A stretch of DNA of 64,000 nucleotides from Schizochytrium sp. TIO01. Its lineage: Eukaryota; Protista; Bigyra: Labyrinthulomycetes. This document shows, one piece after another, positions 1 to 64,000 of this stretch. Position 1 is the first letter of the stretch, and the number at the start of each line of letters is the position of its first letter. A model generated the notes under the pieces. It saw nothing but the letters and a program-made list of their open reading frames with translations. It had not been told where the DNA came from and did not search any database. The DNA lies in the NCBI GenBank assembly GCA_004764695.1, contig SMSO01000025.1, positions 1,426,001 through 1,490,000 of the forward strand. The letters run 5' to 3'. The translations under genes and the position numbers were made by a program.

Positions 1-3000
1 AATCGTCACATCGCCGCCAGTACCTCCGGTACTCGAGCCACCTTTCAGTACCAAGGTACCACCTGTATTAGCTCCAGTCGTAGCTCCGGCTTGAACTGTA
101 ACATCACTGCCATCCGTACTGCTATCACCAGCACTGATCGTAACAGTACCTGCAGTAGTGCTGGCAAGTCCAGATGAAAGCACAATCGACCCAGATGTAC
201 CGCTTGCACTTCCGGTTGACAATGTCAGTGGACCACTGAAAGATGTGGTTGCCGCCGATGCAGCACTGCCAATCGTCACGGCTCCAGAGCTAGTACTTGA
301 ACCAGAAGTGAAAACAAGCGCACCACCTGTTCCACCAGTGGCGATACCTGCAGTGAGCGTGATATCGCTTCCTGTAGTCTGGCTGGTCGAACCAACACTG
401 AGTGTGATTGCACCTGCAGACCCACCAACCGCAGTGCCAGTTGACAACGACACGGCACCGGAAGTACCAGCAGTGGAACTGCCCGTGGACAGACCAATGG
501 CTCCAGTTCCAGTAGATCCTGATGAAGTCAAAGTAATTGCTCCACTACTGAGTGATCCAGATCCTGACGTCACAGCGATTGCACCACCTGTGCCAGTTGT
601 TGCCGTACCAGAACTGATCACTACTTGGCCACCAGTACCGGAGGTACTATCACCAGCGTACATGTTCACAGCACCACCGACCATACCAGAAGCTTCAGTT
701 TTGCCTGCGTAAATCGACACGGCAGCTCCGTTACCGCCAGAAGAGACACCAACTGACAGCGTCATTGCGCCCGCGGTGCCTACGGAGCCAGCGTTGCTGG
801 TGGAAAGTGTTAAACTGCCACTACCAGCAGTACCGGCTGCCGCACCACTGGAAATGCTGACAGCACCGCTTAGTCCGGTTCCTCCAGTGCCTGAAGTTAT
901 TGTAACTGCGCCACCCGCTGCAGAGCCTTGGCCTGCTGTAAATGACAAGTCACCACCCGTAGCAGCTGTAGCCTGACCTGCAGTGATGGTTACATCACCA
1001 CCTGCAGTACTGCCACTGCCGACAGTTATCGAGATAGCACCTCCAGAACCACCTGTACCTGCGCCACCAGTCTGAATTGTAACACCACCAGTGGTACCAC
1101 TTGATGATGTGCCAGTACTGATTGTGATACCGCCGCTAACTCCACTTGTACCACTGTTGGGAGTGGTCATAGAGATGGAACCACTGGTAACACCGCTGCC
1201 TGACGTGAAAGTCAATGCACCGCCAGTAATAGCACTGGATAATCCTGCAGAAATCGCAACAGCACCACCAGTGCCAGATGAGCTAGCGCCAGCGGTCAAT
1301 GTGATTGCACCTCCAGCAACGACACTAGCAGAGTTGGCAGCACCGGCCAAGATCTGAACACCACCACCAGTGCCAGTAGCACTGCCACCTGCAGACAACT
1401 TTACAAGACCTCCGCTGCCAGCTGTGGATGCGGTGCTTGTTGAAAGAGTCAATGCACCAGTGGATCCAGAGGTAGCTGTACCAGTTGAAATAGTCACAGC
1501 ACCACTTGTGCCTAGAGCAGCAGTACCAGATGCGATCGTTACAGCACCACCAGCAGTTGAGCCAGCTCCAGAAGTAAGATCGATGTGTCCGCCGATTCCT
1601 GTAGATGAGGCTCCTGAAGTCAAGGTGATAGCCCCACCAGTGCCAGAGCCAGTGAGTCCACCGGCAGTCAGGACGATGTTACCTGCAGTACCAGACGTTG
1701 CACCGGTGCTGAGTGTCAATGTTCCACTAGTACCAGTGGTAGTTGCACCTGTTTTGATAGTGATCGAGCCACTAGACACTGAATCGGCACTTGAAAATGT
1801 CGCATCTCCACTGGTAGAACCTGTGCCAGTTGTAAAGGTAAGTTCACCGCCAATACCTGAAGAACTGGAACCAGCAGATAAAATGACAGTTCCACCAACA
1901 CCATTGGCGCCTTGACTAGCGCCTGCATATAATGACACAGAACCTCCAGTCTTGCTTGCATCTGTTGTTAGACCAGCAGTCAATGTAATAGTACCACCAT
2001 CGTTAGTATCACCATCACCAACAGTCATCGAGATGACGCCACCATTACCAGAGGTGGCATCTCCAGTACTAACAGTAATGGAACCTGTCGATCCTTGTGC
2101 TGATGAACCAGTAGACAGCGAGATTCCACCACTAATACCAGAAGCCCCCGAGTTTGGTGTATTCAATGAAATGATTCCAGTAGTCACCCCAGAACCAGAT
2201 TTCAAAATTAAAGATCCACCAGTACCAGTGCTATCAGCACCGCCATCAATCGTCACATCGCCGCCAGTACCTCCGGTACTCGAGCCACCTTTCAGTACCA
2301 AGGTACCACCTGTATTAGCTCCAGTCGTAGCTCCGGCTTGAACTGTAACATCACTGCCATCCGTACTGCTATCACCAGCACTGATCGTAACAGTACCTGC
2401 AGTAGTGCTGGCAAGTCCAGATGAAAGCACAATCGACCCAGATGTACCGCTCGCACTTCCGGTTGACAATGTCAGTGGACCACTGAAAGATGTCGTGGCC
2501 GCCGATGCAGCACTGCCAATCGTCACGGCTCCAGAGCTAGTACTTGAACCAGAAGTAAAAACAAGCGCACCACCTATTCCACCAGTGGCGATACCCGCAG
2601 TGAGCGTGATATCGCTTCCTGTAGTCTGGCTGGTCGAACCAACACTGAGTGTGATTGCACCTGCAGACCCACCAACCGCAGTGCCAGTTGACAACGACAC
2701 GGCACCGGAAGTACCAGCAGTGGAACTGCCCGTGGACAGACCAATGGCTCCAGTTCCAGTAGATCCTGATGAAGTCAAAGTAATTGCTCCACTACTGAGT
2801 GATCCAGATCCTGACGTCACAGCGATTGCACCACCTGTGCCAGTTGTTGCCGTACCAGAACTGATCACTACTTGGCCACCAGTACCGGAGGTACTATCAC
2901 CAGCGTACATGTTCACAGCACCACCGACCATACCAGAAGCTTCAGTTTTGCCTGCGTAAATCGACACGGCAGCTCCGTTACCGCCAGAAGAGACACCAAC

Positions 3001-9000: not shown

Positions 9001-10760
9001 AGTAGAGCCCTGGCCAGCCGTAAATGTCAATGCACCGCCCGTCGCAGCTGTAGCCTGACCTGCAGTGACCGTCACACCACCACCAACAGTACTGCCAGTG
9101 CCGACACTCATCAAGATAGATCCTCCGGCACCACCTGTACCTGCGCCACCAGTCTGAATGGTAACACCACCAGTGGTACCACTTGATGATGTGCCAGTAC
9201 TGATTGTGATACTTCCACTAACTCCACTTGTACCACTGTTGGGAGTGGTCATGGAGATAGAACCACTGGTAACACCGCTGCCTGACGTGAAAGTCAATGC
9301 ACCGCCAGTAACAGCATTGGACAATCCTGCAGAAATCGCAACAGCACCACCCGTGCCAGATGAGCTAGCGCCAGCGGTCAATGTGATTGCACCTCCAGCA
9401 ACGACACTAGCAGCATTGGCAGCACCGGCCAAGATCTGAACACCACCACCAGTGCCAGTAGCACTGCCACCCGCAGACAACTTTACAAGACCTCCGCTGC
9501 CAGCTGTGGATGCGGTGCTTGTTGATAGAGTCAATGCACCAGTTGATCCAGAGGTAGCTGTACCAGTTGAAATAGTCACAGCACCACTTGTGCCTAGAGC
9601 AGCAGTACCAGATGCGATCGTTACAGCACCACCAGCAGTTGAGCCAGCTCCAGAAGTAAGATCGATATGTCCGCCGATTCCTGTAGATGAGGCTCCTGAA
9701 GTCAAGGTGATAGCACCACCAGTGCCAGAGCCAGTGAGTCCACCGGCAGTCAGGACGATGTTTCCTGCAGTACCAGACGTTGCACCGGTGCTGAGTGTCA
9801 ATGTTCCACTAGTACCAGTGGTAGTGGTACCTGTCTTCACAGTGATTGAGCCACTGTTCGTTGCATCAGGAGTTGCAATGGTTACTGCACCACTGGAAGT
9901 TCCGTCACCAGAATTAAAACTCAACGATCCACCAGTACCAGTACTATCAGCACCGCCATCAATCGTCACATCGCCGCCGGTACCTCCGGTACTCGAGCCA
10001 CCTTTCAGTACCAAGGTACCACCTGTATTAGCTCCAGTCGTAGCTCCGGCTTGAACTGTAACATCACTGCCATCCGTACTGCTATCACCAGCACTGATCG
10101 TAACAGTACCTGCAGTAGTGCTGGCAAGTCCAGATGAAAGCACAATCGACCCAGAGGTACCGCTCGCACTTCCGGTTGACAATGTCAGAGGACCACTGAA
10201 AGATGTGGTTGCCGCCGATGCAGCACTGCCAATCGTCACGGCTCCAGAGCTAGTACTTGAACCAGAAGTAAAAACAAGCGCACCACCTATTCCACCAGTG
10301 GCGATACCCGCAGTGAGCGTGATATCGCTTCCTGTAGTCTGGCTGGTCGAACCAACACTGAGTGTGATTGCACCTGCAGACCCACCAACCGCAGTGCCAG
10401 TTGACAACGACACGGCACCGGAAGTACCAGCAGTGGAACTGCCCGTGGACAGACCAATTGCGCCAGTTCCAGTAGATCCTGATGAAGTCAAAGTAATTGC
10501 TCCACTACTGACCGATCCAGATCCTGACGTCACAGCGATTGCACCACCTGTGCCAGTTGTTGCCGTACCAGAACTGATCACTACTTGGCCACCAGTACCG
10601 GAGGTACCATCACCAGCGTACATGTTCACAGCACCACCGACCATACCAGAAGCTTCAGTTTTGCCTGCGTAAATCGACACGGCAGCTCCGTTACCGCCAG
10701 AAGAGACACCAACTGACAGCGTCATTGCGCCCGCGGTGCCTACGGAGCCAGCGTTGCTGG
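1..10760 (-). CDS. Open segment 4 of the giant gene (~3,580 aa of mosaic repeats), running off the window end
   Basis: Absent from the ORF track, presumably because no stop is reached. Spot translations at 1-60 and 2131-2220 are in one frame. All plus-strand shadow ORFs from 158 to 10118 share one frame (start mod 3 = 2), which indicates no frameshift. Confidence 0.85.
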
Positions 10761-13700
10761 TGGGAAAGTGTTAACACTGCCACTACCGAGCAGTACCTGG
10801 CTTGGCCGCACCACTGGATAAATGCTGACAGCACCGCTTAGTCCGGTTCCTCCAGTCGCTGAGAGTTTTGTTAACTGGCGCCACCCGCAGCAGAGCCTTG
10901 GCCTGCTGTAAAATGACAAGTCACCACCCCGTAGCAGCTGTAGCCTGACCTGCAGTGATGGTTACATTCACCACCTCGCAGTCTGCCACTGCCGACAGTT
11001 ATCGAGATAGCACCTCCAGAACCACCTGTACCTGCGCCACCAGTCTGATCGTAACACCACCAGTGGTACCACTTGATGATGTGCCAGTACTGATTGTGAT
11101 ACCTCCGCTAACTCCACTTGTACCACTGTTGGGAGTGGTCATGGAGATGGAACCACTGGTAACACCGCTGCCTGACGTGAAAGTCAATGCACCGCCAGTA
11201 ATAGCACTGGATAATCCTGCAGAAATCGCAACAGCACCACCAGTGCCAGATGAGCTAGCGCCAGCGGTCAATGTGATTGCACCTCCAGCAACGACACTAG
11301 CAGAGTTGGCAGCACCGGCCAAGATCTCAACACCACCACCAGTGCCAGTAGCACTGCCACCTGCAGACAACTTAACAAGACCTCCGCTGCCAGCTGTGGA
11401 TGCGGTGCTTGTTGAAAGAGTCAATGCACCAGTGGATCCAGAGGTAGCTGTACCAGTTGAAATAGTCACAGCACCACTTGTGCCTAGAGCAGCAGTACCA
11501 GATGCGATCGTTACAGCACCACCAGCAGTTGAGCCAGCTCCAGAAGTAAGATCGATGTTGTCCCGCCATTCCTGTAGATGAGGCTCCTGAAGTCAAGGTT
11601 GATAGCCCCACCAGTGCCAGAGCTAGTGAGTCCACCGGGCAGTCAGGACGATGTTACTGCAGTTCCAGACGTTGCACCGGTGCTGAGTGTCAATGTTCCA
11701 CTAGTACAGTGGTAGTTGCACCTGTTTTGATAGTGATCGAGCCACTAGACACTGAATCGGCACTTGAAAATGTCGCATCTCCCACTGGTAGAACCTGTGC
11801 CAGTTGTAAAGGTAAGTTCACCGCCAATACCTGAAGAACTAGAACCAGCAGATAAAATGACAGTTCCACCAACACCATTGGCGCCTGACTAGCGCCTGCA
11901 TATAATGACACAGAACCTCCAGTCTTGCTTGCAGCTGTTGTTAGACCAGCAGTCAATGTAATAGTACCACCATCGTTAGTATCACCATCACCAACAGTCA
12001 TCGATATGACGCCACCACTACCAGAGGTGGCATCTCCAGTACTAACAGTAATGGAACCTGTCGATCCTTGTGCTGATTGAACCAGTAGACAGCGAGATTC
12101 CACCACTAATACCAGAAGCCCCCGAGTTTTGGTGTATTCAAGTGAAATGATTCCAGTAGTCACCCCAGAACAGATTTCAAAATTAAAGATCCACCAGTAC
12201 CAGTGCTACAGCACCGCCATCAATCGTCACATCGCCGCCAGTACCGTCTCGGTACTCGAGCCACCTTTCAGTACCAAGGTTCCACCTGTATTAGCTCCAG
12301 TCGTAGCTCCGGCTTGAACAGTAACATCACTGCCATCCGTACTGCTATCACCAGCACTGATCGTAACAGTACCTGCAGTAATGCTGGCAAGTCCAGATGA
12401 AAGCACAATCGACCCAGATGTACCGCTCGCACTTCCGGTTGACAATGTCAGAGGACCACTGAAAGATGTCGTGGCCGCCGATGCAGCACTGCCAATCGTC
12501 ACGGCTCCAGAGCTAGTACTTGAACCAGAAGTAAAAACAAGCGCACCACCTATTCCACTAGTGGCGATACCTGCAGTGAGCGTGATATCGCTTCCAGTAG
12601 TCTGGCTGGTCGAACCAACACTGAGTGTGATTGCACCTGCAGACCCACCAACCGCAGTGCCAGTTGACAACGACACGGCACCGGAAGTACCAGCAGTGGA
12701 ACTGCCCGTAGACAGACCAATGGCTCCAGTTCCAGTAGATCCTGATGAAGTCAAAGTAATTGCTCCACTACTGACTGATCCAGATCCTGACGTCACAGCG
12801 ATTGCACCACCTGTGCCAGTTGTTGCCGTACCAGAACTGATCACTACTTGGCCACCAGTACCGGTGGTACTATCACCAGCGTACATGTTCACAGCACCAC
12901 CGACCATACCAGAAGCTACAGTTTTGCCTGCGTAAATCGACACGGCAGCTCCCGTTACCTGCCAGAAGAGACACCAATTGACAGCGTCATTGCGCCCGCG
13001 GTGCCTCCGGAGCCAGCGTTGCTGGTGGAAAGTGTTAAACTGCCCATACCAGCAGTACCGGCTGCCGCACACTGGAAATGCTGACAGCACCGCTTAGTCC
13101 GGGTTCCTCCAGCGCCTGAAGTAAATTGTAACTGCGCCACCCGCAGCAGAGCCTTGGCCTGCTGTAAATGACAAGTCACCTCCCGTAGCAGCTGTAGCCT
13201 GACCTGCAGTGATGGTTACATCACCACCCGCAGTACTGCCACTGCCAACAGTTAAGAGATAGCACCTCCAGAACCACCTGTACCTGCGCCACCAGTCTGA
13301 ATCGTAACACCCACCAGTGGTACCCACTTGATGATGTGCCAGTACTGATTGTGATACCGCCGCTAACGCCACTTGTACCACTGTTGGGAGTGGTCATAGA
13401 GATGGAACCACTGGTAACACCGCTGCCTGACGTGAAAGTCAATGCACCGCCAGTAACAGCACTGGACAATCCTGCAGAAATCGCAACAGCACCACCAGTG
13501 CCAGATGAGCTAGCGCCAGCGGTCAATGTGATTGCACCTCCAGCAACGACACTAGCAGAGTTGGCAGCACCGGCCAAGATCTCAACACCACCACCAGTGC
13601 CAGTAGCACTGCCACCTGCAGACAACTTTACAAGACCTCCGCTGCCAGCTGTGGATGCGGTGCTTGTTGATAGAGTCAATGCACCAGTGGATCCAGAGGT

Positions 13701-52700: not shown

Positions 52701-55700
52701 AACTTGTTCCAGCACCTGAGAGGATTTGAACACTGCCACCAGCATTTGCATTACTCCTACCCGCCAGCATTGTGATATTACCTCCCACGGCACCGGTAGA
52801 GTTGCCAACATAAAACTCAATGTTGCCGGCGCTTCCACTGAGAGCTTTGCCTGTAGAAAACAAAACAGATCCACTTGTACCTTCAGAAGAAGTTCCTGTC
52901 TGCAATATAATACCGCCGCTAACTCCCGAAGAACCAGCATCCCCGGTCGAAAATAAAAGGCTTCCACTTGAGCTAGAAAGTCCACGGCCTGTATCAAAGC
53001 TAACTTGACCTCCTCGGTGTGAGGTACTGTCTCCAGCGACAAAACTGATATTTCCACCTCTAGATGCAGACGCTTGGCCCGCAGCAAACCATATATTGCC
53101 AGATGAGCCGCTCGCACTGTCTCCAGTCTCAAAGGATATACTGCCACTTGCCCCAACAGAGGCAGATCCAGTATAAAATTGCAGGCTCCCACTTCGGCCA
53201 AGCGGACCCGAGTCTTCCGAGAAAATTTGAACTGATCCACTTGTCGTTTTCTCACCATATCCTGCGGCGATCATTACCGAGCCACCAGTCTTGGTTTCGC
53301 TACTTCCTGCTTGAAGAATGATATTCCCACCACTGCCAGAAGCACTGTCTCCAACAGAAATTGAAACTTCCCCAGCGCTACCCTCAGAAGAATCGCCAGT
53401 AGCAAATAACAGGTCGCCTGAGTCTCCACTTTCAGTTGAACCAGACGTGAAGTGAACATTGCCACTTTCTCCATCATTGAAAGCATCGGCGGTGTGTACT
53501 AAAACGCTGCCGCTATCACCACTTTCACTGGAACCAGAGAGGAGAAACATGTCTCCTCCACGACCCTTTGTTGCATTTCCTCCATAAAAGCCAACTGGGC
53601 CACCGGTATATCCATCTCCACCATAAAAGGTGATATTACCACCTATTCCATAGTTTGCAGAAGATGTACTAGCATGAAATACAATGTCCGCTCCATCGTC
53701 TCCCATAGACTCCCCTGCATTCACATAGATATTACCACCACGTCCCCCAAGACCGATTCCCGTTGACAGAATATAGTCACCTCCATTCGTGGCACCTTCT
53801 CCTGTCTCAATGGTGATATTTCCTCCAGTATATTGGTTAGAATGGCCAGCCTGGAGCATGATACCTGCTCCACGACTTGTACCAGACACACCAGCAGATA
53901 ATTCTATGTTACCCGCAGAGCCACTTAAAGCGCTACCTGTAACTAATGAAATACCACCAGACAGAGTATTCCCCGAGCCTGTAGAGATATAGACTTGGCC
54001 ACTCTGGCTTGAAGAAGCTGTTTTGACACTAAATTCACCACTTGACTTTTTGCTACTTGCTCCGGTAGATAGGATAATAGAACCTCCAGCTAAAGCAGTG
54101 CCTTTACCACCTTGCAAAGTCACATTACCGCCACGCGAGGCTCCATCGCCGGAGGAAATACTAATTGCTCCACCATCACTGCTAACAAGCGAGGTATCAG
54201 TGCTTTCCCCAGCCATAAAAATTAGGCTACCGCCGGTACCCTTGCTCGTTGTCCCAGCGGTTGCTACAATGTCACCACCTCGGCCACTATCACCAGCACC
54301 AGCAACTATCTGGACCATTCCGGCATCAGCCCCTACTGCAGATCCTGTAGCGAGAAGAATTCCGCCAGAGCGAGCTCCAGTCTTTAGACCATTAGGGGTT
54401 GTCATCTGAATGTCACCACTACTACTACTTGCACTACTGCCAGAAATTATCGAAACAAGACCGCCAGTTGCACTTTCAGAAGACCCGGCCACTAGAGTAA
54501 TAGCACCACCAGACTTGGTTCCACCGCTGCCTCCGGAAATACGAACCTCTCCACCAGCTGCTGGAGATGAGCCTGCAACAAAAGTTACATTTCCTCCATT
54601 GTTTAGAGAACTCAAAGTGGATCCGACTACAAATTCGATGCCTCCAGCAGAGCCAGCACTCGCAGTACCTGTTGCAACACTTACAGCTCCACTAGATACT
54701 CCTGATCCGGTTGTTAAACTCAAGTTCCCAGACTTTGCAGACGAAGAAGATCCAGTATTCAGTAAAATACTGCCTCCAACTTTATCAATAGAGGATCCCG
54801 CAGTTATATTTATATTGCCACCAGATCCCGAAGATGAAGAGGCACCTCCGGCTTCTACTGTCAGGTTACCTGCTTTTCCTGACACTACGGCACCCGAAGC
54901 AACACGTACATTGCCCGATCCGACCCCAGCCGCCCATGCACGACTAGATTCAAGGTAGATTGCGCCAGATCTAACTCCAGTGCTACGACCACTTGTCATG
55001 TTTATCGCACCTCCAGTTAAAGCACCAGAGCCTCCGGATAATTCAATGCTGCCACCGCTTCCAGACGGACTAGAACCTGCGGACATTTTAATATTGCCAC
55101 CCAATCCTTTACCTGAAGCTTGGCCAGAATTGAGAGACAGAACACCTCCAGCTGTATCACCACTTTCAGCATGGCCAACTTGAACGATGATACTTCCAGC
55201 TGAACTGGTAGTGCTGTTTCCAGTTTCAATTGTTACTCCGCCGCTGCTATCGTCCGCATTCCCAGTTTGAAGCTGAATGGAGCCAGACGCGGCTTTAGTC
55301 GAATCCGGAGAGAGTATCGAAATTTTGCCGGTACTACCTGATTCACTTTCACCTGAAGATATAATTATATAACCTCCATCACCATCACTGGAAGAATTAC
55401 CAGCGTGGAAGTCAAGGTTACCCCCAGGTCCACTTGTACTTGAGCCACCACGAAGTAAAATGGTTCCGCCTTGAGTTTTGGAAAGCGAGTTTCCACCAAT
55501 AAGCTTCAACGCATTAGGAGCAGAGGATGAACCTACAGAAAGCATAACACCGCCTGAAGAATCAGTTCCATTACCAGAAGAAATGTTCACATTGCCAGAG
55601 GAAGCTGCCTTTGGAGTACTTATGAATATTGTGCCAGATGTGCTGGCGCCCAATCCCGAGGTAATATTGATCAATCCACCTGTAAAAGAACCACTTGAAG

Positions 55701-58700
55701 TTGATGCTCCTCCTGTAATATGGACTTGGCCTCCACTAGTAGAGCTTGCAGAGCCTCCTTGGACAAAAATATGACCGCCGCTTGAAAGTCCAGCAGACGA
55801 ACCAGCGTGGAAGGTTAGGTTGCCACTTCGGCCGCCGGAGACATCACCTGTTGAAATAATAACATTCCCACTCTTGGAAGCAGCAGCACCAGATCCAAGG
55901 ACAACAACTCCAGATGATTTAGTAGCATATCCGGTACTCAATTGAAGATCTCCTGTATCAGAGGCTGACGCTGTGGAGATTCGTGCGCCACCACTTGTTG
56001 TAGCCCCGACACCAGATGATATGAAAACTCCACCGCCAGCCCCCGAAGAACTTTTACCAGCAGTCATGTTCACGTTTCCACCAGCATTCAGTGAATTGCC
56101 TACCTTGATAGAAATCGAGCCCGCTGAGGCAGACGTTGCATTTCCGGAGGTTAGAGAGAGAGCACCACTAGAGCCACTTGTAGACAATCCCGATGATATA
56201 GATACACCACCAGTTGCTAATGTACCGTTTCCACTACCAAAGCTAGCAGCTCCAGAGCTCTGGAATCCACTACCCGAAAAGGCAATTATGCTACCACCAT
56301 TTCCCTTTGTGGAGGTTCCTCCTACAAGCATTACTTTGCCACCATCAGCGTCAGAACTTGCGTAACCACCACTTAAAGATAAATCACCACCCGCGCCTGC
56401 TGCATCGCTAGCATTACCTGCTGTGACCGAGACTCGAGCTCCATCATTTGAAGTGGAGGTTCCAGCACGAATGGAAATCGCCCCTGCACGACCGCTAAGT
56501 GCGTAGCCAGTTGTGAGTTCGAGATTTCCTGATGATCCAGCGCCAACAACGCCACTACCAAGTGATACTGCTCCAGATCCAGTTAGTGAAGCACTTGCAG
56601 TAGTCAGGTTCAGATTACCGGAGCGACCTGTGGTAGCAGATCCACTGACAATAGTGATATCTCCACCGGTCCTCGACCCATGACCTGATTCGAGTTTTAG
56701 ATACCCACCAGTACCGGCAGTCGCAGTACCTGCTTTAAGATGAATATAGCCTCCGACCGAACCACTTGCCGAGGTTTGTCCTGCATATACAGTCACATTA
56801 CCGCTAGCAGATGATTTAGAAGTGCCAACACTTAATGAGATAGATCCACTTGTCAGTCCACTGCCGGAGCTAATTGAGACTTCTCCGCTAGAGCCTGCTG
56901 AAGCATTTCCAGACTGGATAACAACAGAGCCAGAGTTGCCAGCTGAGGCTAGGGCAGTTTCGAGGCTGAGTTTACCCGATCCCGATCCACCTTTACCGCT
57001 GGCAAGAGTTATTTGTCCACCTAGTCCACTAGTGCTCAACCCACCAGTGACTAGCACCGCGCCACCAGTACCTCCCTCTGAAGCACCAGCGGACATATTA
57101 AGGTATCCTCCAACTGCCTGAGATTTACTAACGTTACCTGCACTAACAAGGACACTCGCGCCTTCTAACGCGGCCGCAGAAAGACCAGCACTAATACGGA
57201 TATCACCTGCCTGCGTTTCTGCAGCGCCTGTCGAAAAAATCAAATCACCTGAATTCTCACCTGCAGTGCCGGTCAAAATGAAAACACCACCTGATGAATA
57301 ATCTGACGAAGCTGCAGAGGCTATATTTACAGACCCAGAAATGCCACTTTCAGCAGTACCAGATCGCAATGTAATAGAAGCTCCGTCCGCAGATCCACTA
57401 GAATAACCAGCTTGAATAGTGACTGCACCTGCTTGACCAGTCCCAGAGCTATTGCCACCGGAAATTTGAACTCCTCCTGCGAGCCCAGCTACACTGCGGC
57501 CACCTGAAAGATACAATGACCCACCGTTGTAGTATCCATAGCCTCCAGTCATATTTGTTTTGCCTCCAACACCACCGCTGCTTTGCCCAGCACTGATAGA
57601 TGCATCACCACCATAACTATATGCGTTACCCGCTTGAAGAACTAGTCGGCCTCCAACAGCTGTCGCAGCAGATGTGTTTCCTGCCAATAGCTGAAGCGAT
57701 CCACCAGTAAGGCCGCGGGATGTACGACCGACTACCAAAGAGATGTCACCAGCAGCTCCTGTTGCGTTGCCTGTTACAATCTCAAAACCTCCAGAAGAAG
57801 CACTTTCGGATGCAACGCTACTAGTCGAGACAACAATAGACCCAGAAGACTCGGTTCCTTTTCCAGTCCCGATAGTCACTGAACCACCTTTCGTGGTGCC
57901 AGAACCAGTGTTAAGTTGAATGTCCCCTCCGGCACCAGAGAGACTACTGCCACTTGTCACAAGAACTTCACCACCAAGTCCCACAGAAGTCATTCCTGCT
58001 TCAATAAGCACACGACCACCCTGAGTTTTCCCAGAGCCACTCTTCAAGTTAATTCCACCACCGATGCTTGTCAACGAAGAACCGGCAATTACAGTGAAGT
58101 TGCCCGAATCACCCTGTGATGCAACTCCTGTGACAAAGTCAATAGATCCAGACTCGATCGTCCCATTACCTGTCGTAAGTGAGATTGAGCCACTAGAACC
58201 ACCAACTGCTTTCGGCGTAGCCAGGCTGATGCCCCCAGAAGATAAACCAGAGCCAGATTGAAGCACGACATCACCACCAATGCCAACAGGAGAATCTCCT
58301 GCAGAGGCAATGAACGATCCACCGCTAGTGCCAGAATATGATGAACCCACAGCAAGGATTACATTTCCAGCACTGCCAGCTTCCAAAGCATCACCAGATG
58401 CAATGTTGACCGTGCCACTTGATGTTGCCCCAGACCCTGTAGAGATATTAATGGAACCAGAGCCAGCTGTACTGCCGTCTGCACTCTGAATGGATATTGT
58501 ACCGCTGGAGTTTGATCCTGAATGAACTCCACTCTGAATCGTTACACCGCCAGCCGGAGCGTTTTTGTTAGAACTATGCCCACCAATTAGCCGCAAAGTT
58601 CCAGGGAGTCCTTCAGAGGCGGTAGTTGATCCAACTTGAACGACAACATCTCCACTCTTACCATTTGTAACGTTTCCAGTTCGAAGGGTTAAGGGGCCTG

Positions 58701-61700
58701 ATAATGAAGTACCTTTGCCGGTTTGAACAGTAACATTTCCTGAACCAGCTCCGGGAGAGGACTCCAGAAGGATGTTGCCGGTCGAACCCTCATCACTTGA
58801 ACCAGACACTAAGTGAATAAGGCCACCCTTACCTGTTTTACTAGACCCGCCCTTCAGCAATACCGTTCCACCTGAATATGAGCCGGTGACACTGCCACCG
58901 ATAAGAGAGACATCGGCACCCACAGCCTTAGTAGTGGAACCAGCTTGAATTAGGATTTCTCCTGCGGACGTTGTTTTTGCACTTCCGGTTAAAAGATTTA
59001 GACTTCCAGACGCTCCACCGTTACTGTCACCTGTACTCAAAGTGATTTCACCTGTACCTGGCGAATAGCCATCGCTTGTCTGAATTGAAACCTTCCCAGT
59101 TTTGGCAAGGGAGCTAGCGCCACCCGAAATAAGGACCTGGGCTCCAGGCTGAGATTCTGCATTACCACCACGAATCTCAACACTGCCAGGAAGAGCCGAG
59201 TTGGACGCATTACCAGCTCTGATTGAAACAACTCCAGCAGCGCTTTGAGTTGCAGACCCAGCCTCAAGGTTAAGATGACCACCTTGCAACGTTGACGAGC
59301 CTCCAGAAATTGCAACAGAGCCACCAAGGTGGGGACCAGCTCCGCCTGTGATGTTAATAATTCCGGCTGAACCAAGTTCAGATGATGCAGTAAGAAGATT
59401 TAAATCACCAGAGGTTGTTAAGCTTCCTTGAGCTAAACCCGTTTTAATAGTTACACTTGCTCCAGTATCGGCACTTGGGGAAATGCCAGCTTCAATTAGG
59501 ATCTCTCCTGCTTGTGCTGTAGCATTGCCTGTGTAGAGATGAAGCGAACCCGTTTTGATTGCATCGCCAGATCCAACTTCAAGATTTCCAGATCTTGAAG
59601 AGCCCTCACCAGATCGCATAACGATGGATCCACTTGTGGCCCCTTCTCCGCTAAGAACAGTTATCGCTCCACCAACTTTCGATCCTGAACCTCCAGAGAG
59701 CTCCAAAGAACCACCGTTGCCAGAGAGTGCATTGCCTCCAGCAATACGCACAGTACCCGCATCACCAGACGTAACTTGACCCGTTCCCAATGTAAAGTCC
59801 CCAGAGGCTAACTTGCCATCTCCGGACAGAAAGGAAACTTGACCTGATTCGGAGCCAGCACCAGATATCAACGAAATACTTCCAGAGGTCAAGCCAGAAC
59901 TCGTGCCAGTTGCTATTGTAACAGATCCAGATACTGCTTCTCCTGTAGCAGGAGTTTTGACTGAAACAGAACCAGATGAAGTATCTGCATCGTCTGAACT
60001 ACCAGACTGCAAGATGATATCACCAGCAAGTTTAGTACCAGAACCCGCCTTCATATAAATTGATCCACCAGAGGATACACCGTCTCCAGCAGTAATGTTG
60101 ACGAAGCCTCCAGCGCCTCGCCCGGCCATTCCACCTGAGATGAGGACAGCTCCTGCGCTTGAACCAAGACTGCTTGCACCGCCCTGCATATTGAGAACAC
60201 CTCCATAGCCTCTAGCACTGTTACCTGAAGATAAAGTGATTTCGCCTCCATTACCTGATGCACCAGTGACGGCACCAGCTGTTAGGTATATTCCTGACCC
60301 ATCCCCTGCATTCGAAGATCCTGTCTGCAATACGAATGATCCGGCAGAACTACCTTCTTTTGATGCAGCGCCAGTGGACAAGTAAATCGATCCCGAAGAG
60401 GAACTAGAAGCGCTCGTTTCAAGCACAATTGAGCCAGATTGAGTCGAACCGGTTCCAGAGGAAAGAGTTATGTTGCCCGATTCACCAACTGAATTGCTGC
60501 CACTCGTCAGAGAGATGGACCCTCCTTGAACTGCTTTGTTCGATGCTGTACCCCCCACAATGGTAACGTCCCCGCCGCGGTATTTTTGAGCGCCGTTGCC
60601 AGCTTGAAGCAGTATATCGCCACCAGCACCATACTTTGCACTTCCACTGACTAGAGAAAGAAGTCCACCGCTGACACCATTTCCTGTAGCTGAGCCCGAG
60701 ACCAGAGACACAGACCCGCCACTAGTTTCTCCTTTCCCAGCTTCAAGAGTAATGGAGCCACCATTTTTAGACAGGCCCGTACCAGCCCGGATGCTTAATG
60801 AGCCTCCATCTGCGGAGGATGAGTTTCCAGCATGCAGCAGTATGGTACCACCTCGTCCAGCCTCACTCGAGCCTCCAACTAGACCAATATCGCCACCTTG
60901 CTCAGACCCGGCACCTCCTAAAAGATTGATTGATCCAGAAATACCGTCAGATGCAGAACCTGTAGAGAAAGTCAAATTGCCCGAATCTATACCCTTGGAC
61001 TCGGTTGCGGCAGTTATGATATCAATATTTCCACTGGAAGGCCCAGAACTTGTAGACCCACTTAGAAGGGAAATGGACCCTCCAATATTCTTCTCAGAAA
61101 ACCCTCCTTTCAGTTGGATTTGACCTGCTGTGCCGGAGCTGGATCCGACTTGCAAAGCAATACTCCCTGAAGTACCCGAAGAGGCACCCGAAGAAAGTGT
61201 TATAGAACCAGTTTGGGTTGGCGACTCACCAGAAGCCAAAATAACCTCACCTGATGCAGATGTGCCTACGGCAGACATGATTCCGACTGATCCAGAGCTA
61301 CCAGTACTGCTGTTACCACTGAGGAGCATTAGGGAACCTCCTTGCTCCTTATTTGCATTTCCAGCAGATACGGTGATATCTCCACCCATGCCGACGTCAT
61401 TGTAGGCGTGACCAGCCTGTATATCTATCGAGCCACCTGATAAAGATCCATAGTCTGTTCCTGCACTAATGTAAGTGCTACCCGCGCGTACAAAGTCCTC
61501 ATTTGAAGATGTGCTATCGCCAGACGCGATTCTGACATCACCCGCAACTGATTGACCTGATGACAATGACTTTACATATATATTTCCACCACGCGCTTCT
61601 TCAGCTCCGCTAGAAACGATATTTACATCTCCAGCTAAAGTAGTGGAACTTCCGCTTTGGATAAATACACCTCCACCCGAAACATCTGAAGATCCTGCTG

Positions 61701-64000
61701 CAATACTAATATTGCCAGATTGCCCGGTACTAGCTGAACCAGTACGAATTACGATATTTCCGCTAGATGCTCCACTGGCTTCGCCAGACATAATGTTAAG
61801 GTTTCCTGATGAGTAGGATTCAGCTGTTCCAAGAGTAAGATTACCACTGAAACCTGTAGAGCCACCACCGCTACCAGAAAGTAATCTTATACTTCCACCA
61901 TGTGCACCACTAACAGAGCCAGATCCACCATACATGTCAAGCCACCCACCTGTAACACCTGCAGCATAGGAATTTCCGCCTTGTATTTGAACATGGCCAG
62001 CGTTAAACGCGGATTCTTGACTGACAGCACTGGATTCAAGTGTCTCGATATCTTCTAGCGATTGTATATCTCCTCCCTTAATACGAAGCTCTCCAGCAAG
62101 ACCATTTGTAGAAGACCCAGACTCTAATAAGAGATCCCCACCTTCTACACCTTCGCCGGCATTAATTGTGACAGATCCGCCCGTACTAAGGGCACTAGAG
62201 CCTGCCTCTATAGACATAGAGCCACCTATGCTCGAGACACCAGTTGCACCTCCAGCGAGAAGACTAAAGGAGCCGCCATCTGATCGTCTACTAGAACTAG
62301 ATCCAGCAGAGAGCCCAATGGATCCTCCGACACCCCCAGCTCCAGCAGCAATTTTCAGGTGACCTGCACTTCCACCTGATGGCGAGTCTCCAGCGAGAAT
62401 CTGAATAGAACCGCTCTGAGACGTTGATTCACCTGCTTCCACGGTGATATTTCCAGAATCGCCACCGGTTGATTGACCTGTACGGAAAACCATACTCCCT
62501 GAAGAACCACGAGCCGTACCAGTGGTTAGAGTCACTTTACCAGATAAAGATCCTGATGCATCACCAGTAGCAATTTGCAAATCTCCTGTGCTTGCTGATG
62601 CAGATGTGCTAAGGAGAGCCGCACCAGATTGACCTTCATCAGCAGTGCTTTTACCTGAAGAAAGTACTAAATTACCGCCAACCCCGGTGTCAGCAGTAGA
62701 AATACCACCTAAAAGAGAAACAGATCCGCTATTCCGACCAGACTGACCAGCCTTAATCTCTACATCTCCAGCCTGACCCACGGAGTCTCCAGAGTACAAT
62801 GAAAGCTTTCCAGAAGCTCCAGAAGAAGACACCGAGCCAGAATGAACAATAACGTCACCACTGGCCAATCCAGCTGATGCTGCACTGGCCATTCTCAATT
62901 GACCGGACGTATCAGACGAACTGCCTCCCGTTTCAATAACCACAGATCCTCCTAATGAACTGGCACTAGTTGTGTTTCCAGCTTTAATTGTGAGGGATCC
63001 TCCATCACCAGTGTTCGTACCTCCAGCAATTATATTGATGGAGCCCGCCTTGCCCCCTGAAGCCACGCCTGTAGCAAGGCTCAAATCTCCGGCTTTGCCT
63101 TCAATTGCTTTTCCAGTCGCAATTTCAATCGCACCTGAGCCTCCAACATTTTCAGTCGCAGCATTATAATAGTCCCCTGCATCAGCAGTGGAAATTCGCA
63201 ATGAGCCACTTACATCTGAGGAATCGACACCAATGGTAAAGCGCTTATGGATCACTTGGAGTGCGCCGACTAAATCAAGTGTGACAGCTTGCTTGTTTAC
63301 CTCGTGAAAATCTGCAATTGAGAAGTTCTTTTCCGGAAACGTAAGATTTTCAATAATGTTGACATACTCTGGGAATACGGTCTCAAGTTCCTGGGCGATT
63401 ACACCACGAACAACAGCGGCTTCTCCAAGTCCTCGAATAGCTCGCCATTGAGCTGTGTACTCATATTGTCGAAGTTCAATATTTTGCAAGCGGTGATATA
63501 CAGTTGCCATATCAGCATCAACAATGTTTTGTTTGATTCGTTGATCTGACGGATACATGATTGCAGTCGTCTGAATCGGGACATGCGAGTAGATTTCATC
63601 TTGGCGAACCCGAAATGTGATGTTGCCGTGAACCATGTTTTCAGTATTACCAATAGTAAATTCAGACTCCAGATTGGTGAATTCCATCCGAACGTCATTA
63701 CCAGGTTCGAAGACAATATCTTCACCTTCACTTGAGTTCAGACGAATACTACCATTACTAGATACTTCAATGCGAGGCTCAAATGACGCGTCCTGGATAG
63801 TAACCATGCTATTTTCATTATCCCCTGGACTGAGCACAATAGAACCACCAGATTTTCCGGTTCCAGCACGGAGTTCGATATCACCTGTATGACCACCAGC
63901 TGATGAACCTGTGCTGAGTATAATTGAGCCACTTGCTTTCACCGCAGATCCAGTTCTGAGCTCTAAGTCACCCGAACTCGAGCCGGAACTCCTGCCGGAA
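1..64000 (-). CDS. Giant Gly/Ser/Thr/Ala-rich beta-repeat protein with an internal Peptidase S74/ICA domain; partial at both ends, about 21,300 codons in the window, interrupted only by probable sequencing frameshifts
   Basis: The minus-strand ORFs 38401-63942, 30023-38404 and 13221-29939 abut or nearly abut, and the same repeat text continues across each break. The frame stays open upstream of the GTG at 63942 to the window edge (SGRSSGSSSGDLELRTGSAVKASG). It is also open from ~10760 down to base 1 (ending ...GTLVLKGGSSTGGTGGDVTI). Confidence 0.85.
10760..13325. other. Indel-dense low-quality stretch (probable unpolished long-read sequence) within the giant CDS
   Basis: Many 1-nt indels relative to the intact paralogous copy at ~800-3345, clustered at about 10760-11050, 11555-12250 and 12950-13325. 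The net excess is about +20 nt. Confidence 0.8.
13325..30054 (-). CDS. Open segment 3 of the giant gene (~5,570 aa): end of the 217-aa array, spacer and start of the mosaic array
   Basis: 5572-aa ORF. Its tail (GYHWWVLRF...) is out-of-frame text caused by indels near 13310-13325. Confidence 0.85.
21460..22150 (-). other. Single-copy in-frame spacer (~230 aa) between the two arrays
   Basis: Unique DNA with the same strand grammar (GQILLVAG, GAIFVSTA, GVLYLESGYG, GHIYIQTANGG, GEVKISTG, GDISLLVG). Confidence 0.85.
22150..50640 (-). repeat. Coding tandem array: 44 units of 651 bp (217 aa), with 657- and 660-bp length variants and two subtypes
   Basis: The GDITLSVGTG marker recurs at 22159, 22810, 23461, 24112 and onward to 50225. 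By manual count, 25 units carry AGLNRA and 19 carry AGDSSA. Confidence 0.95.
30055..38402 (-). CDS. Open segment 2 of the giant gene (~2,780 aa of 217-aa repeats)
   Basis: 2793-aa ORF. It starts and ends mid-repeat at frameshifts (-1 near 38405, +2 near 30055). Confidence 0.85.
38403..64000 (-). CDS. Open segment 1 of the giant gene (>8,500 aa): S74 domain, diverged repeat region and first part of the 217-aa array
   Basis: 8513-aa ORF in the track, extendable in frame to 64000. The 'start' is an internal GTG (Val). The stop at 38401 arises from a 1-nt deletion inside a repeat unit. Confidence 0.9.
50550..53560 (-). repeat. Eleven diverged ~273-bp (91-aa, six-strand) tandem repeats
   Basis: The strand-5 'VG' codons recur at about 53351, 52806, 52533, 52259, 51986, 51701, 51428, 51158, 50885 and 50612, with spacing mostly 273 bp. 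Confidence 0.8.
53560..63230 (-). repeat. Irregular, highly diverged 13-18-aa Gly-flanked beta-strand repeats (not repetitive at DNA level)
   Basis: Continuous units such as GSINIIAG, GDVEIKAG, GSISLLSG and GNITLSSG separated by G/S/T/A loops. No long DNA identity between units is visible. Confidence 0.8.
63238..63552 (-). other. Peptidase S74 / intramolecular chaperone autoprocessing (ICA/CIMCD) domain, MYRF-like
   Basis: Sequence is YP-SDQRIKQNI...LRQYEY...RGVIAQELETVFPEYV...F...DFHEVNKQAVTLDLVGALQ. It carries the family motifs SDxRxKxNI and GxIAQE...PExV, plus FxxVNKxxxxxxxVGA, which I recognise from MYRF-type domains. The putative Ser nucleophile codon is 63547-63549 and the Lys codon is 63532-63534. 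Confidence 0.9.

What the first reader, a model, noticed from the sequence alone, without database searches (positions are those of the whole stretch)
1..64000. One >64-kb gene encoding a >21,000-aa putative self-processing fibre protein
Seen: every part of the window translates on the minus strand into the same strand-loop grammar, the frame is open at both edges, and the breaks fall mid-repeat. Known: proteins over 20,000 aa are very rare (titin, giant PKS/NRPS, some giant bacterial surface proteins). Inference: this is a different architecture, an S74 autoprotease/chaperone fused to about 1,400 Gly-flanked beta-strand units, apparently without introns. At ~0.48 nm per beta rung, this part alone would be about 0.2-0.35 micrometre as a single-chain solenoid or about 0.7 micrometre as a triple-stranded beta-helix. 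That is the scale of EM-visible cell-surface hairs, filaments or extrusome threads. I do not recognise it as a characterised gene.
Basis: partly seen in the sequence, partly recalled or inferred. Interest (0 to 1): 0.92.

Follow-up and report, generated by a model that had tools for sequence, protein, structure and literature searches.

The report
Giant self-cleaving fibre protein gene
The whole window is the middle of one roughly 105,000-base, apparently intron-free gene of a thraustochytrid protist that encodes a secreted protein of about 35,000 amino acids, close to titin in size, built like a phage tail fibre with two internal self-cutting modules.

Summary
The minus-strand reading frame leaves both window edges. 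It starts at a Met 20.5 kb beyond the right edge (signal peptide, two PSI modules) and stops 20.7 kb before the left edge: about 105.2 kb, 35,057 codons, 3.2 MDa. Apart from the two ends and two Peptidase_S74 modules, all of it is one 15-residue Gly-x-hydrophobic-x-hydrophobic unit (about 2,300 copies; about 1,400 in the window).

The frame breaks look like assembly errors. The only break in unique DNA lacks the extra base in contigs of four independent public runs. Three are single small indels against in-frame paralogues. A 2.6-kb patch carries 40 one-base indels.

Strain differences are 23 synonymous to 10 non-synonymous. Fragmentary relatives with the same repeat–S74–repeat layout occur in Saprolegnian oomycetes, all unnamed.

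Models favour an intertwined homotrimeric, triple-stranded beta-helix fibre that cuts itself at two MYRF-like Ser-Lys sites. Transcription is probable, not proven. Cellular role and exact repeat number are unknown.

The scan noted parts of this same locus before (the S74 module, the C-terminal domain), not on other DNA. I found no paper describing it.

The parts
38404..64000 (-). In-window part of a 10,882-aa open frame that continues to window coordinate 71049. It is joined in reality to the 4,502-aa frame upstream that begins at the Met at 84460 (contig C24:1510460).
   Evidence: The 71027 break is absent from four independent runs.
63123..63891 (-). Non-repeat island holding S74 module 2. 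The Pfam core is 63361-63549. The predicted cleavage motif YP|SDQRIK has its Ser-to-Lys codons at 63532-63549. Module 1 (SS|SDRRIK) lies outside the window at 65320-65337.
   Evidence: It aligns to MYRF 7dc3 with Ser on the mutated catalytic position and Lys on K592 (PMC8326128).
50668..63122 (-). Diverged 15-residue units with no high-identity DNA repeat (old part of the array).
22155..50667 (-). About 44 tandem copies of a 651/657-nt (217/219-aa, 14-strand) higher-order repeat. They are 74-98% identical in DNA and 80-99% in protein.
38405..38405 (-). Frame break: one base missing relative to two in-frame paralogues (AATG-CTTG versus AATGACTTG).
30052..30059 (-). Frame break: two extra single bases in a garbled 13-nt stretch relative to in-frame paralogues.
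10760..13330 (-). Low-accuracy patch with 40 one- or two-base indel events and 40 mismatches against the paralogous copy at 3520-540. Two other copies of the same unit differ by 87 mismatches and one in-frame 3-nt indel. All the small ORF fragments and stops of this zone lie here.
1..21479 (-). In-window part of a 9.97-kb super-repeat (about 3.2 copies, 97-98% identical) that runs on to window coordinate -10630. The frame then continues to the stop at -20725 (C24:1405275) after a roughly 100-aa Cys-bracketed C-terminal domain.

Best explanation
The window is the central 61% of a single, intact, probably intron-free gene (G000:C24, about 1405275-1510460, minus strand). It belongs to an Aurantiochytrium-like thraustochytrid and encodes a secreted precursor of about 35,057 aa and 3.2 MDa. 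The layout is: signal peptide, two PSI modules, about 6,100 aa of 15-residue beta units, S74 module 1, about 350 aa of units, S74 module 2, about 28,000 aa of units, and a small disulfide-bracketed C-terminal domain. Shown: the frame, the repeat grammar, the two S74 modules with an intact Ser/Lys dyad, purifying selection, relatives in oomycetes, and the artefactual nature of one break. Inferred: three chains assemble in the secretory pathway into an intertwined triple-stranded beta-helix fibre, nucleated by the S74 (intramolecular chaperone) modules as in phage tail fibres and MYRF. Once trimeric, each module cuts the chain in front of its Ser. This would give an N-terminal fibre of about 6,374 aa (about 0.2 micrometre), a 596-aa piece and a fibre of about 28,087 aa (about 0.9 micrometre at 0.48 nm per 15-residue unit). 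The product would be an acidic (pI 4.3), Ser/Thr-rich and probably glycosylated extracellular filament. Its place in the cell is unknown.
For: Continuity: open segments of 4,502, 10,882, 2,826, 5,629, 7,192 and 3,390 aa on one strand. About 34 kb of this has no DNA-level repeat.

Breaks: at 71027 the contigs of four runs from four studies all lack one base of the assembly's GGG. The breaks at 38405, 30052-30059 and -10751 are single 1-2-nt indels against in-frame paralogues. The 13330-10760 patch has 40 tiny indels where sister copies have one in-frame indel.

Selection: 33 strain differences over 6 kb are 23 synonymous and 10 non-synonymous, against 32% synonymous expected (binomial p = 1e-5).

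No joints or introns appear over the 6 kb laid.

Ends: Met, hydrophobic leader and PSI (E 2e-5). There are 16 Cys in the first 160 aa and 2 in the last 100 aa, and almost none between. No transmembrane helix was found.

S74: PF13884 at 59 and 43 bits. phrog tail-fibre families match at E 5e-27. MYRF 7dc3 matches at E 6e-19 with the dyad aligned.

Trimer: ipSAE 0.84 against 0.00 for the best of three controls, run agreement at least 91%, pLDDT at least 79; the mark was reached by 21 of 30 solved homomers and 0 of 23 single chains. The interface includes the flanking repeats, residues 5-55 and 258-321.

Repeat fold: AF2 pLDDT 79 but no intrachain strands by DSSP. The only PDB matches are single chains of triple-stranded beta-helix phage hyaluronidases 2c3f and 6wv2 (Z 4.3 and 4.2, rmsd 5.6 and 4.9 over 179 and 182 residues). 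The best BFVD matches are Caudovirales proteins (E 5e-6).

Family: 650 relatives, 148 below 1e-10. They include Aphanomyces euteiches, A. invadans and Achlya hypogyna. P0001 has three S74 modules between the same repeats.
Against: Only one of the breaks could be tested with reads. The others lie in 93-99% identical repeats where reads cannot be placed.

Expression is not shown. The runs that hold the locus as 20-35-kb contigs are only guessed to be RNA.

The trimer pass may be memory of solved S74 trimers. The fold matches are weak (Z about 4), and the AF2 alignment was made of the protein's own repeats.

In phages the S74 chaperone sits C-terminal to what it folds. Here 80% of the protein lies downstream of the last module, so what nucleates that part is unexplained.

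The copy number in the 97-98% identical 10-kb units and the 651-nt array depends on one long-read assembly.
Confidence: 0.6

Rival explanations
1. The gene is real but is truly interrupted in this strain. It would be a recently broken pseudogene, or several shorter proteins ending at the stops near 38.4 kb, 30.0 kb, 13.2-10.8 kb and -10.8 kb.
For: Four break zones remain untested by reads. The 38405 deletion and the 30052-30059 change are not simple homopolymer slips.
Against: The one testable break is an assembly error. Downstream of every break the frame stays open for thousands of codons with the same grammar. The patch has an indel-to-substitution ratio of 1:1, against 1:87 in sister copies, which is typical of raw long-read consensus and not of mutation. 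No Met or signal-like restart follows any break.
Confidence: 0.12
2. The repeats form a single-chain beta-solenoid or another non-intertwined fold. The S74 modules would serve only the short stalks next to them, so the fibre would be monomeric, or trimeric only locally.
For: A 15-residue coil is known in single-chain beta-helices (own knowledge: spruce budworm antifreeze protein). Fold matches to triple beta-helices are weak, at Z 4.3. 80% of the chain has no downstream chaperone.
Against: A fairly confident monomer model (pLDDT 79) makes no intrachain strand ladders at all. The trimer model puts the repeats on both sides of S74 in inter-chain contact. No Foldseek match to any solenoid was found.
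Confidence: 0.15
3. The gene is real but much shorter. The 651-nt array and the 9.97-kb units would have been over-expanded or mis-joined by the long-read assembler.
For: About 60 kb of the locus is 75-98% identical repeats. The assembly shows consensus errors here.
Against: Copies differ by 2-25%, enough for long reads to place them. Variants are ordered in blocks (657-nt, then 651-nt sub-families) rather than being identical duplications. By my reckoning from the record coordinates, independent short-read contigs cover about 50.5-85.5 kb collinearly.
Confidence: 0.08
4. It is a fibre gene of an integrated virus or virus-like element, not a cellular gene.
For: The S74 modules and the repeats resemble phage tail fibres. 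Related thraustochytrids carry mirusvirus elements (10.1101/2023.06.15.545109).
Against: The gene is flanked by 6-8 kb of ORF-poor DNA of 39-41% GC with no viral genes seen. The N-terminus has eukaryotic PSI modules and is conserved in oomycete genomes. No relative was found in IMG/VR with the S74 module. A 105-kb gene exceeds the size of most such elements.
Confidence: 0.04

Closest known systems
Phage tail fibres and tailspikes with an S74 intramolecular chaperone (endosialidase endoNF; phage T5 long tail fibre, 6f45)
   Same: Both have a Peptidase_S74 domain with a Ser-Lys dyad next to a Gly-rich fibrous stalk, and predicted trimerisation. The repeats resemble Caudovirales proteins and triple-stranded beta-helix chains.
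   Different: In phages the module is at the C-terminus, is discarded, and serves a fibre of a few hundred residues. Here there are two internal modules with 6,374 aa before them and 28,087 aa after. The protein also has a eukaryotic signal peptide and PSI modules, and it is a cellular gene.
MYRF (myelin regulatory factor), ICA domain, PDB 7dc3
   Same: It is the closest solved sequence relative (E 6e-19). The module is internal, the P|S-D-x-R-x-K cleavage motif is the same, and cleavage depends on the trimer (PMC8326128; PMC3742443).
   Different: No NDT80-type DNA-binding domain and no transmembrane helix were found. This protein is an extracellular structural protein, not a membrane-tethered transcription factor.
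Streptococcal phage hyaluronidases HylP1 and HylP2 (2c3f, 6wv2), triple-stranded beta-helix
   Same: They are the only structural matches of the repeat model (Z 4.3 and 4.2). The chain is extended with no intrachain sheets.
   Different: The match is weak, there is no sequence similarity, there is no evidence of lyase activity, and this protein is about 100 times longer.
Other giant proteins: titin, PKZILLA-1/-2, giant bacterial surface proteins
   Same: The size class is the same. PKZILLA-1 has 45,212 aa and 4.7 MDa, PKZILLA-2 has 3.2 MDa, and titin is about 25% smaller than PKZILLA-1 (10.1101/2024.01.29.577497). This precursor has about 35,057 aa and 3.2 MDa.
   Different: It has no enzyme or Ig/FN3 domains. 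It appears to be one uninterrupted exon and is built from a single 15-residue unit. It is predicted to cut itself into three pieces.
Unnamed oomycete proteins (Achlya hypogyna OQR97563.1, Aphanomyces euteiches CAK4417441.1, A. invadans H310_14209)
   Same: They share the repeat unit, the repeat-S74-repeat layout and the PSI-neck N-terminus, at 36-47% identity.
   Different: All are fragments or chimeric models of 1,767 aa or less. No model of 4,700-14,900 aa was found in 5.8 billion proteins.

Membership tests
Peptidase S74 / intramolecular chaperone auto-processing (ICA) domain proteins | Match to PF13884 above the curated cut-off | tested here: met
   Two modules score 59.2 and 43.3 bits against a cut-off of 22. 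The pair scores 90 bits.
Peptidase S74 / intramolecular chaperone auto-processing (ICA) domain proteins | Catalytic Ser with Lys five residues downstream, aligned with MYRF S587/K592 (equivalent to endoNF S911/K916) | tested here: met
   The motifs are SDRRIK and SDQRIK. The alignment to 7dc3 puts Ser on the S587A position and Lys on K592 (PMC8326128). The family consensus is SDxRIK.
Peptidase S74 / intramolecular chaperone auto-processing (ICA) domain proteins | Homotrimer formation | tested here: inconclusive
   Model only: ipSAE 0.84 against 0.00 for the best control (21 of 30 solved homomers and 0 of 23 single chains reached the mark). The pass may be memory of solved S74 trimers.
Peptidase S74 / intramolecular chaperone auto-processing (ICA) domain proteins | Autoproteolysis in front of the Ser | not testable with these tools
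   It needs expression of the module with and without a Ser-to-Ala change, or semi-tryptic peptides that begin at SDQRIK or SDRRIK.
Phage-type tail fibre with a C-terminal, released chaperone | S74 domain at the extreme C-terminus | tested here: not met
   The modules start at residues 6,375 and 6,971 of about 35,057.
MYRF family | NDT80-type DNA-binding domain upstream and a transmembrane helix downstream of the ICA domain | tested here: not met
   Pfam finds only PSI and S74. No hydrophobic window lies in any in-frame segment.
Triple-stranded beta-helix fibres | Three intertwined chains whose strands pair between chains, not within a chain | tested here: inconclusive
   The monomer model has pLDDT 79 with no DSSP strands. 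The best PDB matches are 2c3f and 6wv2 at Z 4.3 and 4.2. The repeats flanking S74 lie in the trimer interface. No trimer of repeats alone was modelled.
Adenovirus-type triple beta-spiral shaft (15-residue repeat) | 15-residue repeat with the shaft's hydrophobic pattern and a structural match | tested here: inconclusive
   The period is the same, 15. There is only a weak profile hit to adenoviral fibre 8on5 (E 0.079) and no structural match. The unit has only two hydrophobic positions.

The most novel reading that the evidence does not exclude
The whole 105-kb frame is transcribed and translated as one precursor of about 3.2 MDa. That would make it about titin-sized, second in residue number only to PKZILLA-1 among eukaryotic proteins, and the longest uninterrupted eukaryotic coding exon I know of. 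It would assemble as a phage-style triple-stranded beta-helix into filaments of about 0.2 and 0.9 micrometre. These filaments would be a so far unassigned, EM-visible extracellular structure shared by thraustochytrids and Saprolegnian oomycetes, for example fibrils of the zoospore or cyst surface, of flagellar hairs or of the wall.
Probability: 0.3. Interest if true: 0.9.

Novelty: new variant of a known kind. Interest (0 to 1): 0.8.

Why it matters
If it holds, a free-living protist makes one of the largest polypeptides known from a single exon. It would do so using the assembly logic of phage tail fibres: a trimerising, self-cutting S74 chaperone next to a Gly-rich intertwined beta-helix, stretched by two orders of magnitude.

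It would extend the eukaryotic use of the S74 module beyond MYRF to a structural, extracellular role. It would define an unannotated stramenopile family that current gene models break into fragments or chimeras. It would also give a concrete candidate for micrometre-scale surface filaments.

The locus also illustrates how residual indels in long-read assemblies hide giant repeat genes.

Tried and rejected
- Tandem Repeats Finder found nothing because its period limit is 500. Lag analysis and BLAST were used instead.
- A single-sequence AF2 run of the S74-1 region was poor (pLDDT 43) and is not used.
- Foldseek against the PDB gave no match for the repeat model.
- Pfam and PHROGs found no family for the repeats or for the C-terminal 400 aa.
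- A profile of the repeats found no solved relative by sequence.
- A search for giant (4,700-14,900 aa) relatives of the S74 region found none.
- The IMG/VR scan with the S74 module found none.
- The proteomics paper PMC12221091 and its supplements do not mention S74, endosialidase or plexin. Paper searches for S74 in stramenopiles gave nothing relevant.
- Introns as the cause of the breaks were rejected. The overlaps between frames are 22-100 nt, the repeat register runs straight through, and each break is a 1-2-nt difference from a paralogue.
Paralogues at 93-99% identity would map there and mimic 'corrections'.
Full report
**Where the window lies**

The window is G000:C24:1426001-1490000 of a 64.07-Mb, 37-contig genome. 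Earlier notes of this scan call it an Aurantiochytrium-like thraustochytrid. I did not test that name. The published A. limacinum Nanopore assembly has a similar total size but smaller contigs.

**The observation**

On the minus strand the window is a chain of very long open segments. The outermost two run off both edges. I fetched 30 kb on each side.

- The frame begins at a Met at window coordinate 84460.
- It ends at a stop at -20725.
- It is carried by open segments of 4,502, 10,882, 2,826, 5,629, 7,192 and 3,390 aa, plus a few short pieces between 13.1 and 11.0 kb.
- With X at the breaks the product has about 35,057 residues, about 3.16 MDa and pI 4.3. Its composition is 24% Gly, 18% Ser, 15% Thr and 11% Ala.
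- The flanks are ORF-poor DNA of 39-41% GC, against 48-54% GC in the gene.

**One repeat grammar throughout**

- The base period is 45 nt (15 aa) in every 3-kb block and in every protein zone.
- The unit logo is the same in three distant zones: G-x-[GS]-G-x-[IVL]-x-[LIV]-x-[TSA]-G-x4.
- From 84.5 to about 50.7 kb the units are diverged, with no higher-order DNA repeat.
- From 50667 to 22155 there are about 44 copies of a 651/657-nt (217/219-aa) repeat.
- From 21479 to -10630 there are about 3.2 copies of a 9.97-kb unit at 97-98% identity.
- A single 217-aa unit finds 220 matches from 83.7 kb to -20.4 kb.
- In the whole genome, all 144 matches (150 of 215 candidates were scored) lie in this locus.

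**The frame breaks**

There are five break zones.

- *71027 (unique DNA, just outside the window).* Contigs of four public runs from four studies all lack one base of the assembly's GGG. That restores the frame. The runs differ from the assembly by only 2-25 substitutions over 6 kb, and no joints were seen.
- *38405.* One base is missing relative to two in-frame paralogues.
- *30052-30059.* Two extra bases sit in a garbled 13-mer.
- *-10751.* GGGG stands where a 99% identical paralogue has GGGGG.
- *13330-10760.* There are 40 tiny indel events and 40 mismatches against the sister copy at 3520-540. Two other sister copies differ by 87 mismatches and a single in-frame 3-nt indel.

An indel-to-substitution ratio near 1, confined to 2.6 kb, is the signature of an unpolished long-read patch and not of decay. 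I did not lay reads on the in-window breaks. Paralogues at 93-99% identity would map there and make the result uninterpretable.

**Selection**

The 33 differences between the assembly and the four runs are 23 synonymous and 10 non-synonymous, and 23 lie at third codon positions. Given their transition/transversion mix, 32% synonymous would be expected (p = 1e-5). The frame on both sides of the 71-kb 'break' is therefore under purifying selection.

**Non-repeat parts**

- *N-terminus.* There is a Met, a hydrophobic leader (FLGMFALLALMNIAAV) and two Cys-rich PSI modules (PF01437, E 2e-5). Together they carry 16 of the protein's 19 Cys.
- *Two S74 islands.* They lie at 65562-64929 and 63891-63123, each with PF13884. 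They match phage tail-fibre PHROGs at E about 5e-27. Their motifs are SS|SDRRIK and YP|SDQRIK.
- *Closest solved relative of the S74 modules.* It is MYRF (7dc3; profile E 6e-19, single sequence 4e-11). The Ser aligns with the mutated catalytic Ser and the Lys with K592. In MYRF, cleavage falls between P586 and S587, needs S587 and K592 (equivalent to endoNF S911/K916), and occurs only in the trimer (PMC8326128).
- *C-terminus.* It is a domain of about 100 aa bracketed by the last two Cys. Pfam and PHROGs do not recognise it.
- *Membrane anchor.* No in-frame hydrophobic helix exists anywhere.

**Relatives**

A search of 1.84 billion representative proteins with the twin-S74 region gave 650 hits, 148 below 1e-10. 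Most are fragments at 35-45% identity.

- All named hits are Saprolegnian oomycetes: Aphanomyces euteiches, Achlya hypogyna ('Peptidase S74 domain-containing protein') and A. invadans.
- The nearest ESM-Atlas cluster is 83% eukaryotic, most commonly Oomycota.
- P0001 (1,767 aa) has three S74 modules separated by the same repeats. P0003 and P0012 have an internal module with repeats on both sides. The repeat-S74-repeat layout is therefore a family trait.
- The PSI-neck N-terminus is conserved at 43-49% identity.
- The A. invadans model H310_14209 joins that N-terminus to PTHB1 domains and looks chimeric.
- No relative of 4,700-14,900 aa exists among 5.8 billion predicted proteins, and none was found in IMG/VR.
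- I found no paper on the family.

**Fold and assembly (models only)**

- Three copies of the 331-aa S74-2 module with its flanks score ipSAE 0.84, against 0.00 for the best of three controls. Run agreement is at least 91% and pLDDT at least 79. In calibration the mark was reached by 21 of 30 solved homomers and 0 of 23 single chains. The tool warns that a pass may come from memory of solved S74 trimers.
- The interface includes the Gly-rich repeats on both sides, residues 5-55 and 258-321.
- A 434-aa double repeat was folded with an alignment of 51 internal copies at 30-89% identity. It gives pLDDT 79.4 and pTM 0.65, yet DSSP finds essentially no strands. The chain is confident but does not pair with itself.
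- Foldseek finds nothing in the PDB.
- The wide search finds four weak matches. The top two are single chains of the triple-stranded beta-helix phage hyaluronidases 2c3f (Z 4.3, rmsd 5.6, 179 residues) and 6wv2 (Z 4.2, rmsd 4.9, 182 residues).
- In BFVD the best matches are uncultured Caudovirales proteins (E 5e-6, low TM).
- Together this favours an intertwined trimer over a single-chain solenoid, at about 2:1 in my judgement.

**Mechanism proposed**

Shown: the layout, the dyad, selection and the family. Inferred: the precursor enters the ER and three chains are registered by the S74 modules. The Gly-rich units zip into a triple-stranded beta-helix. Each trimeric module then cuts before its Ser. 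This gives pieces of 6,374, 596 and 28,087 aa.

At 0.48 nm per unit per chain (established geometry of beta-helices, my own knowledge), the fibres would be about 0.2 and 0.9 micrometre long.

Unexplained: what nucleates the 28,000 aa that have no downstream chaperone. The C-terminal domain is a candidate.

**Expression**

Seven runs guessed to be RNA (contig totals 19-41 Mb, against 64 Mb for the DNA runs) hold 85-99% of the words of a 6-kb stretch. Two of them carry it in contigs of 35 and 20.7 kb without joints.

From the record coordinates, and assuming collinearity, the contig of X19 ends about 105 nt upstream of the ATG. The contig of X1 ends at about 50.46 kb, where the high-identity array begins. 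This fits a very long unspliced transcript. The RNA label is a guess, however, and I could not lay a silent control, so expression is probable and not shown.

**Size in context**

PKZILLA-1 has 45,212 aa and 4.7 MDa, PKZILLA-2 has 3.2 MDa, and titin is about 25% smaller than PKZILLA-1 (10.1101/2024.01.29.577497). This precursor is in that class. Unlike those proteins it appears to be one exon made of one small unit. Bacterial genes of about 110 kb are known (my own knowledge, not checked here).

**Limits**

- Only one call each of the look-up of sequencing runs and read laying was allowed.
- Repeat copy numbers rest on one assembly.

**Verdict**

The finding is real and understated. It is most likely an intact, giant, secreted, self-processing fibre gene of an undescribed stramenopile family, built on phage tail-fibre principles. 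Its cellular role is unknown.

Noticed in passing
L013:2382-5318 (-) = G000:C36, about 3324256-3327192: A 979-aa ORF fuses an N-terminal Peptidase_S74 domain (residues 46-106) to ATAD3_N and an AAA ATPase domain. This is an unusual partner for an S74 module.
   Followed up: no
L012:4860-8618 (-) on C6; L011:4056-5330 (+) on C34: Two much smaller secreted-looking proteins (1,253 and 425 aa) have a classical C-terminal S74 domain. They share a Cys motif near the N-terminus. They are not Gly-rich like the giant gene.
   Followed up: partly
P0157 (Aphanomyces invadans H310_14209): This public gene model joins the PSI-neck-repeat N-terminus of this fibre family to PTHB1/BBS9 hairpin and C-terminal helix-bundle domains. 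It is probably a chimeric mis-annotation of a giant gene.
   Followed up: partly
P0131 (Logan contig, 1,410 aa): The same 15-residue repeats alternate with kringle-like Cys-rich modules, a second architecture of the repeat family.
   Followed up: no
window 21479 to 10.6 kb beyond the left edge: A 9.97-kb super-repeat is present in about 3.2 copies at 97-98% identity, nested above the 15-aa and roughly 217-aa levels. It points to very recent segmental growth of the gene.
   Followed up: partly
L007 (window 84001-94000) and L006 (30 to 20 kb before the window start): The giant gene is flanked by 6-8 kb of DNA at 36-42% GC with almost no ORFs of 120 aa or more. These are unusually large empty flanks.
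   Followed up: no
L010 (C24:1405275-1406474), last 100 aa or so of the protein: The C-terminal non-repeat domain is bracketed by two Cys and is unrecognised by Pfam and PHROGs.
   Followed up: partly
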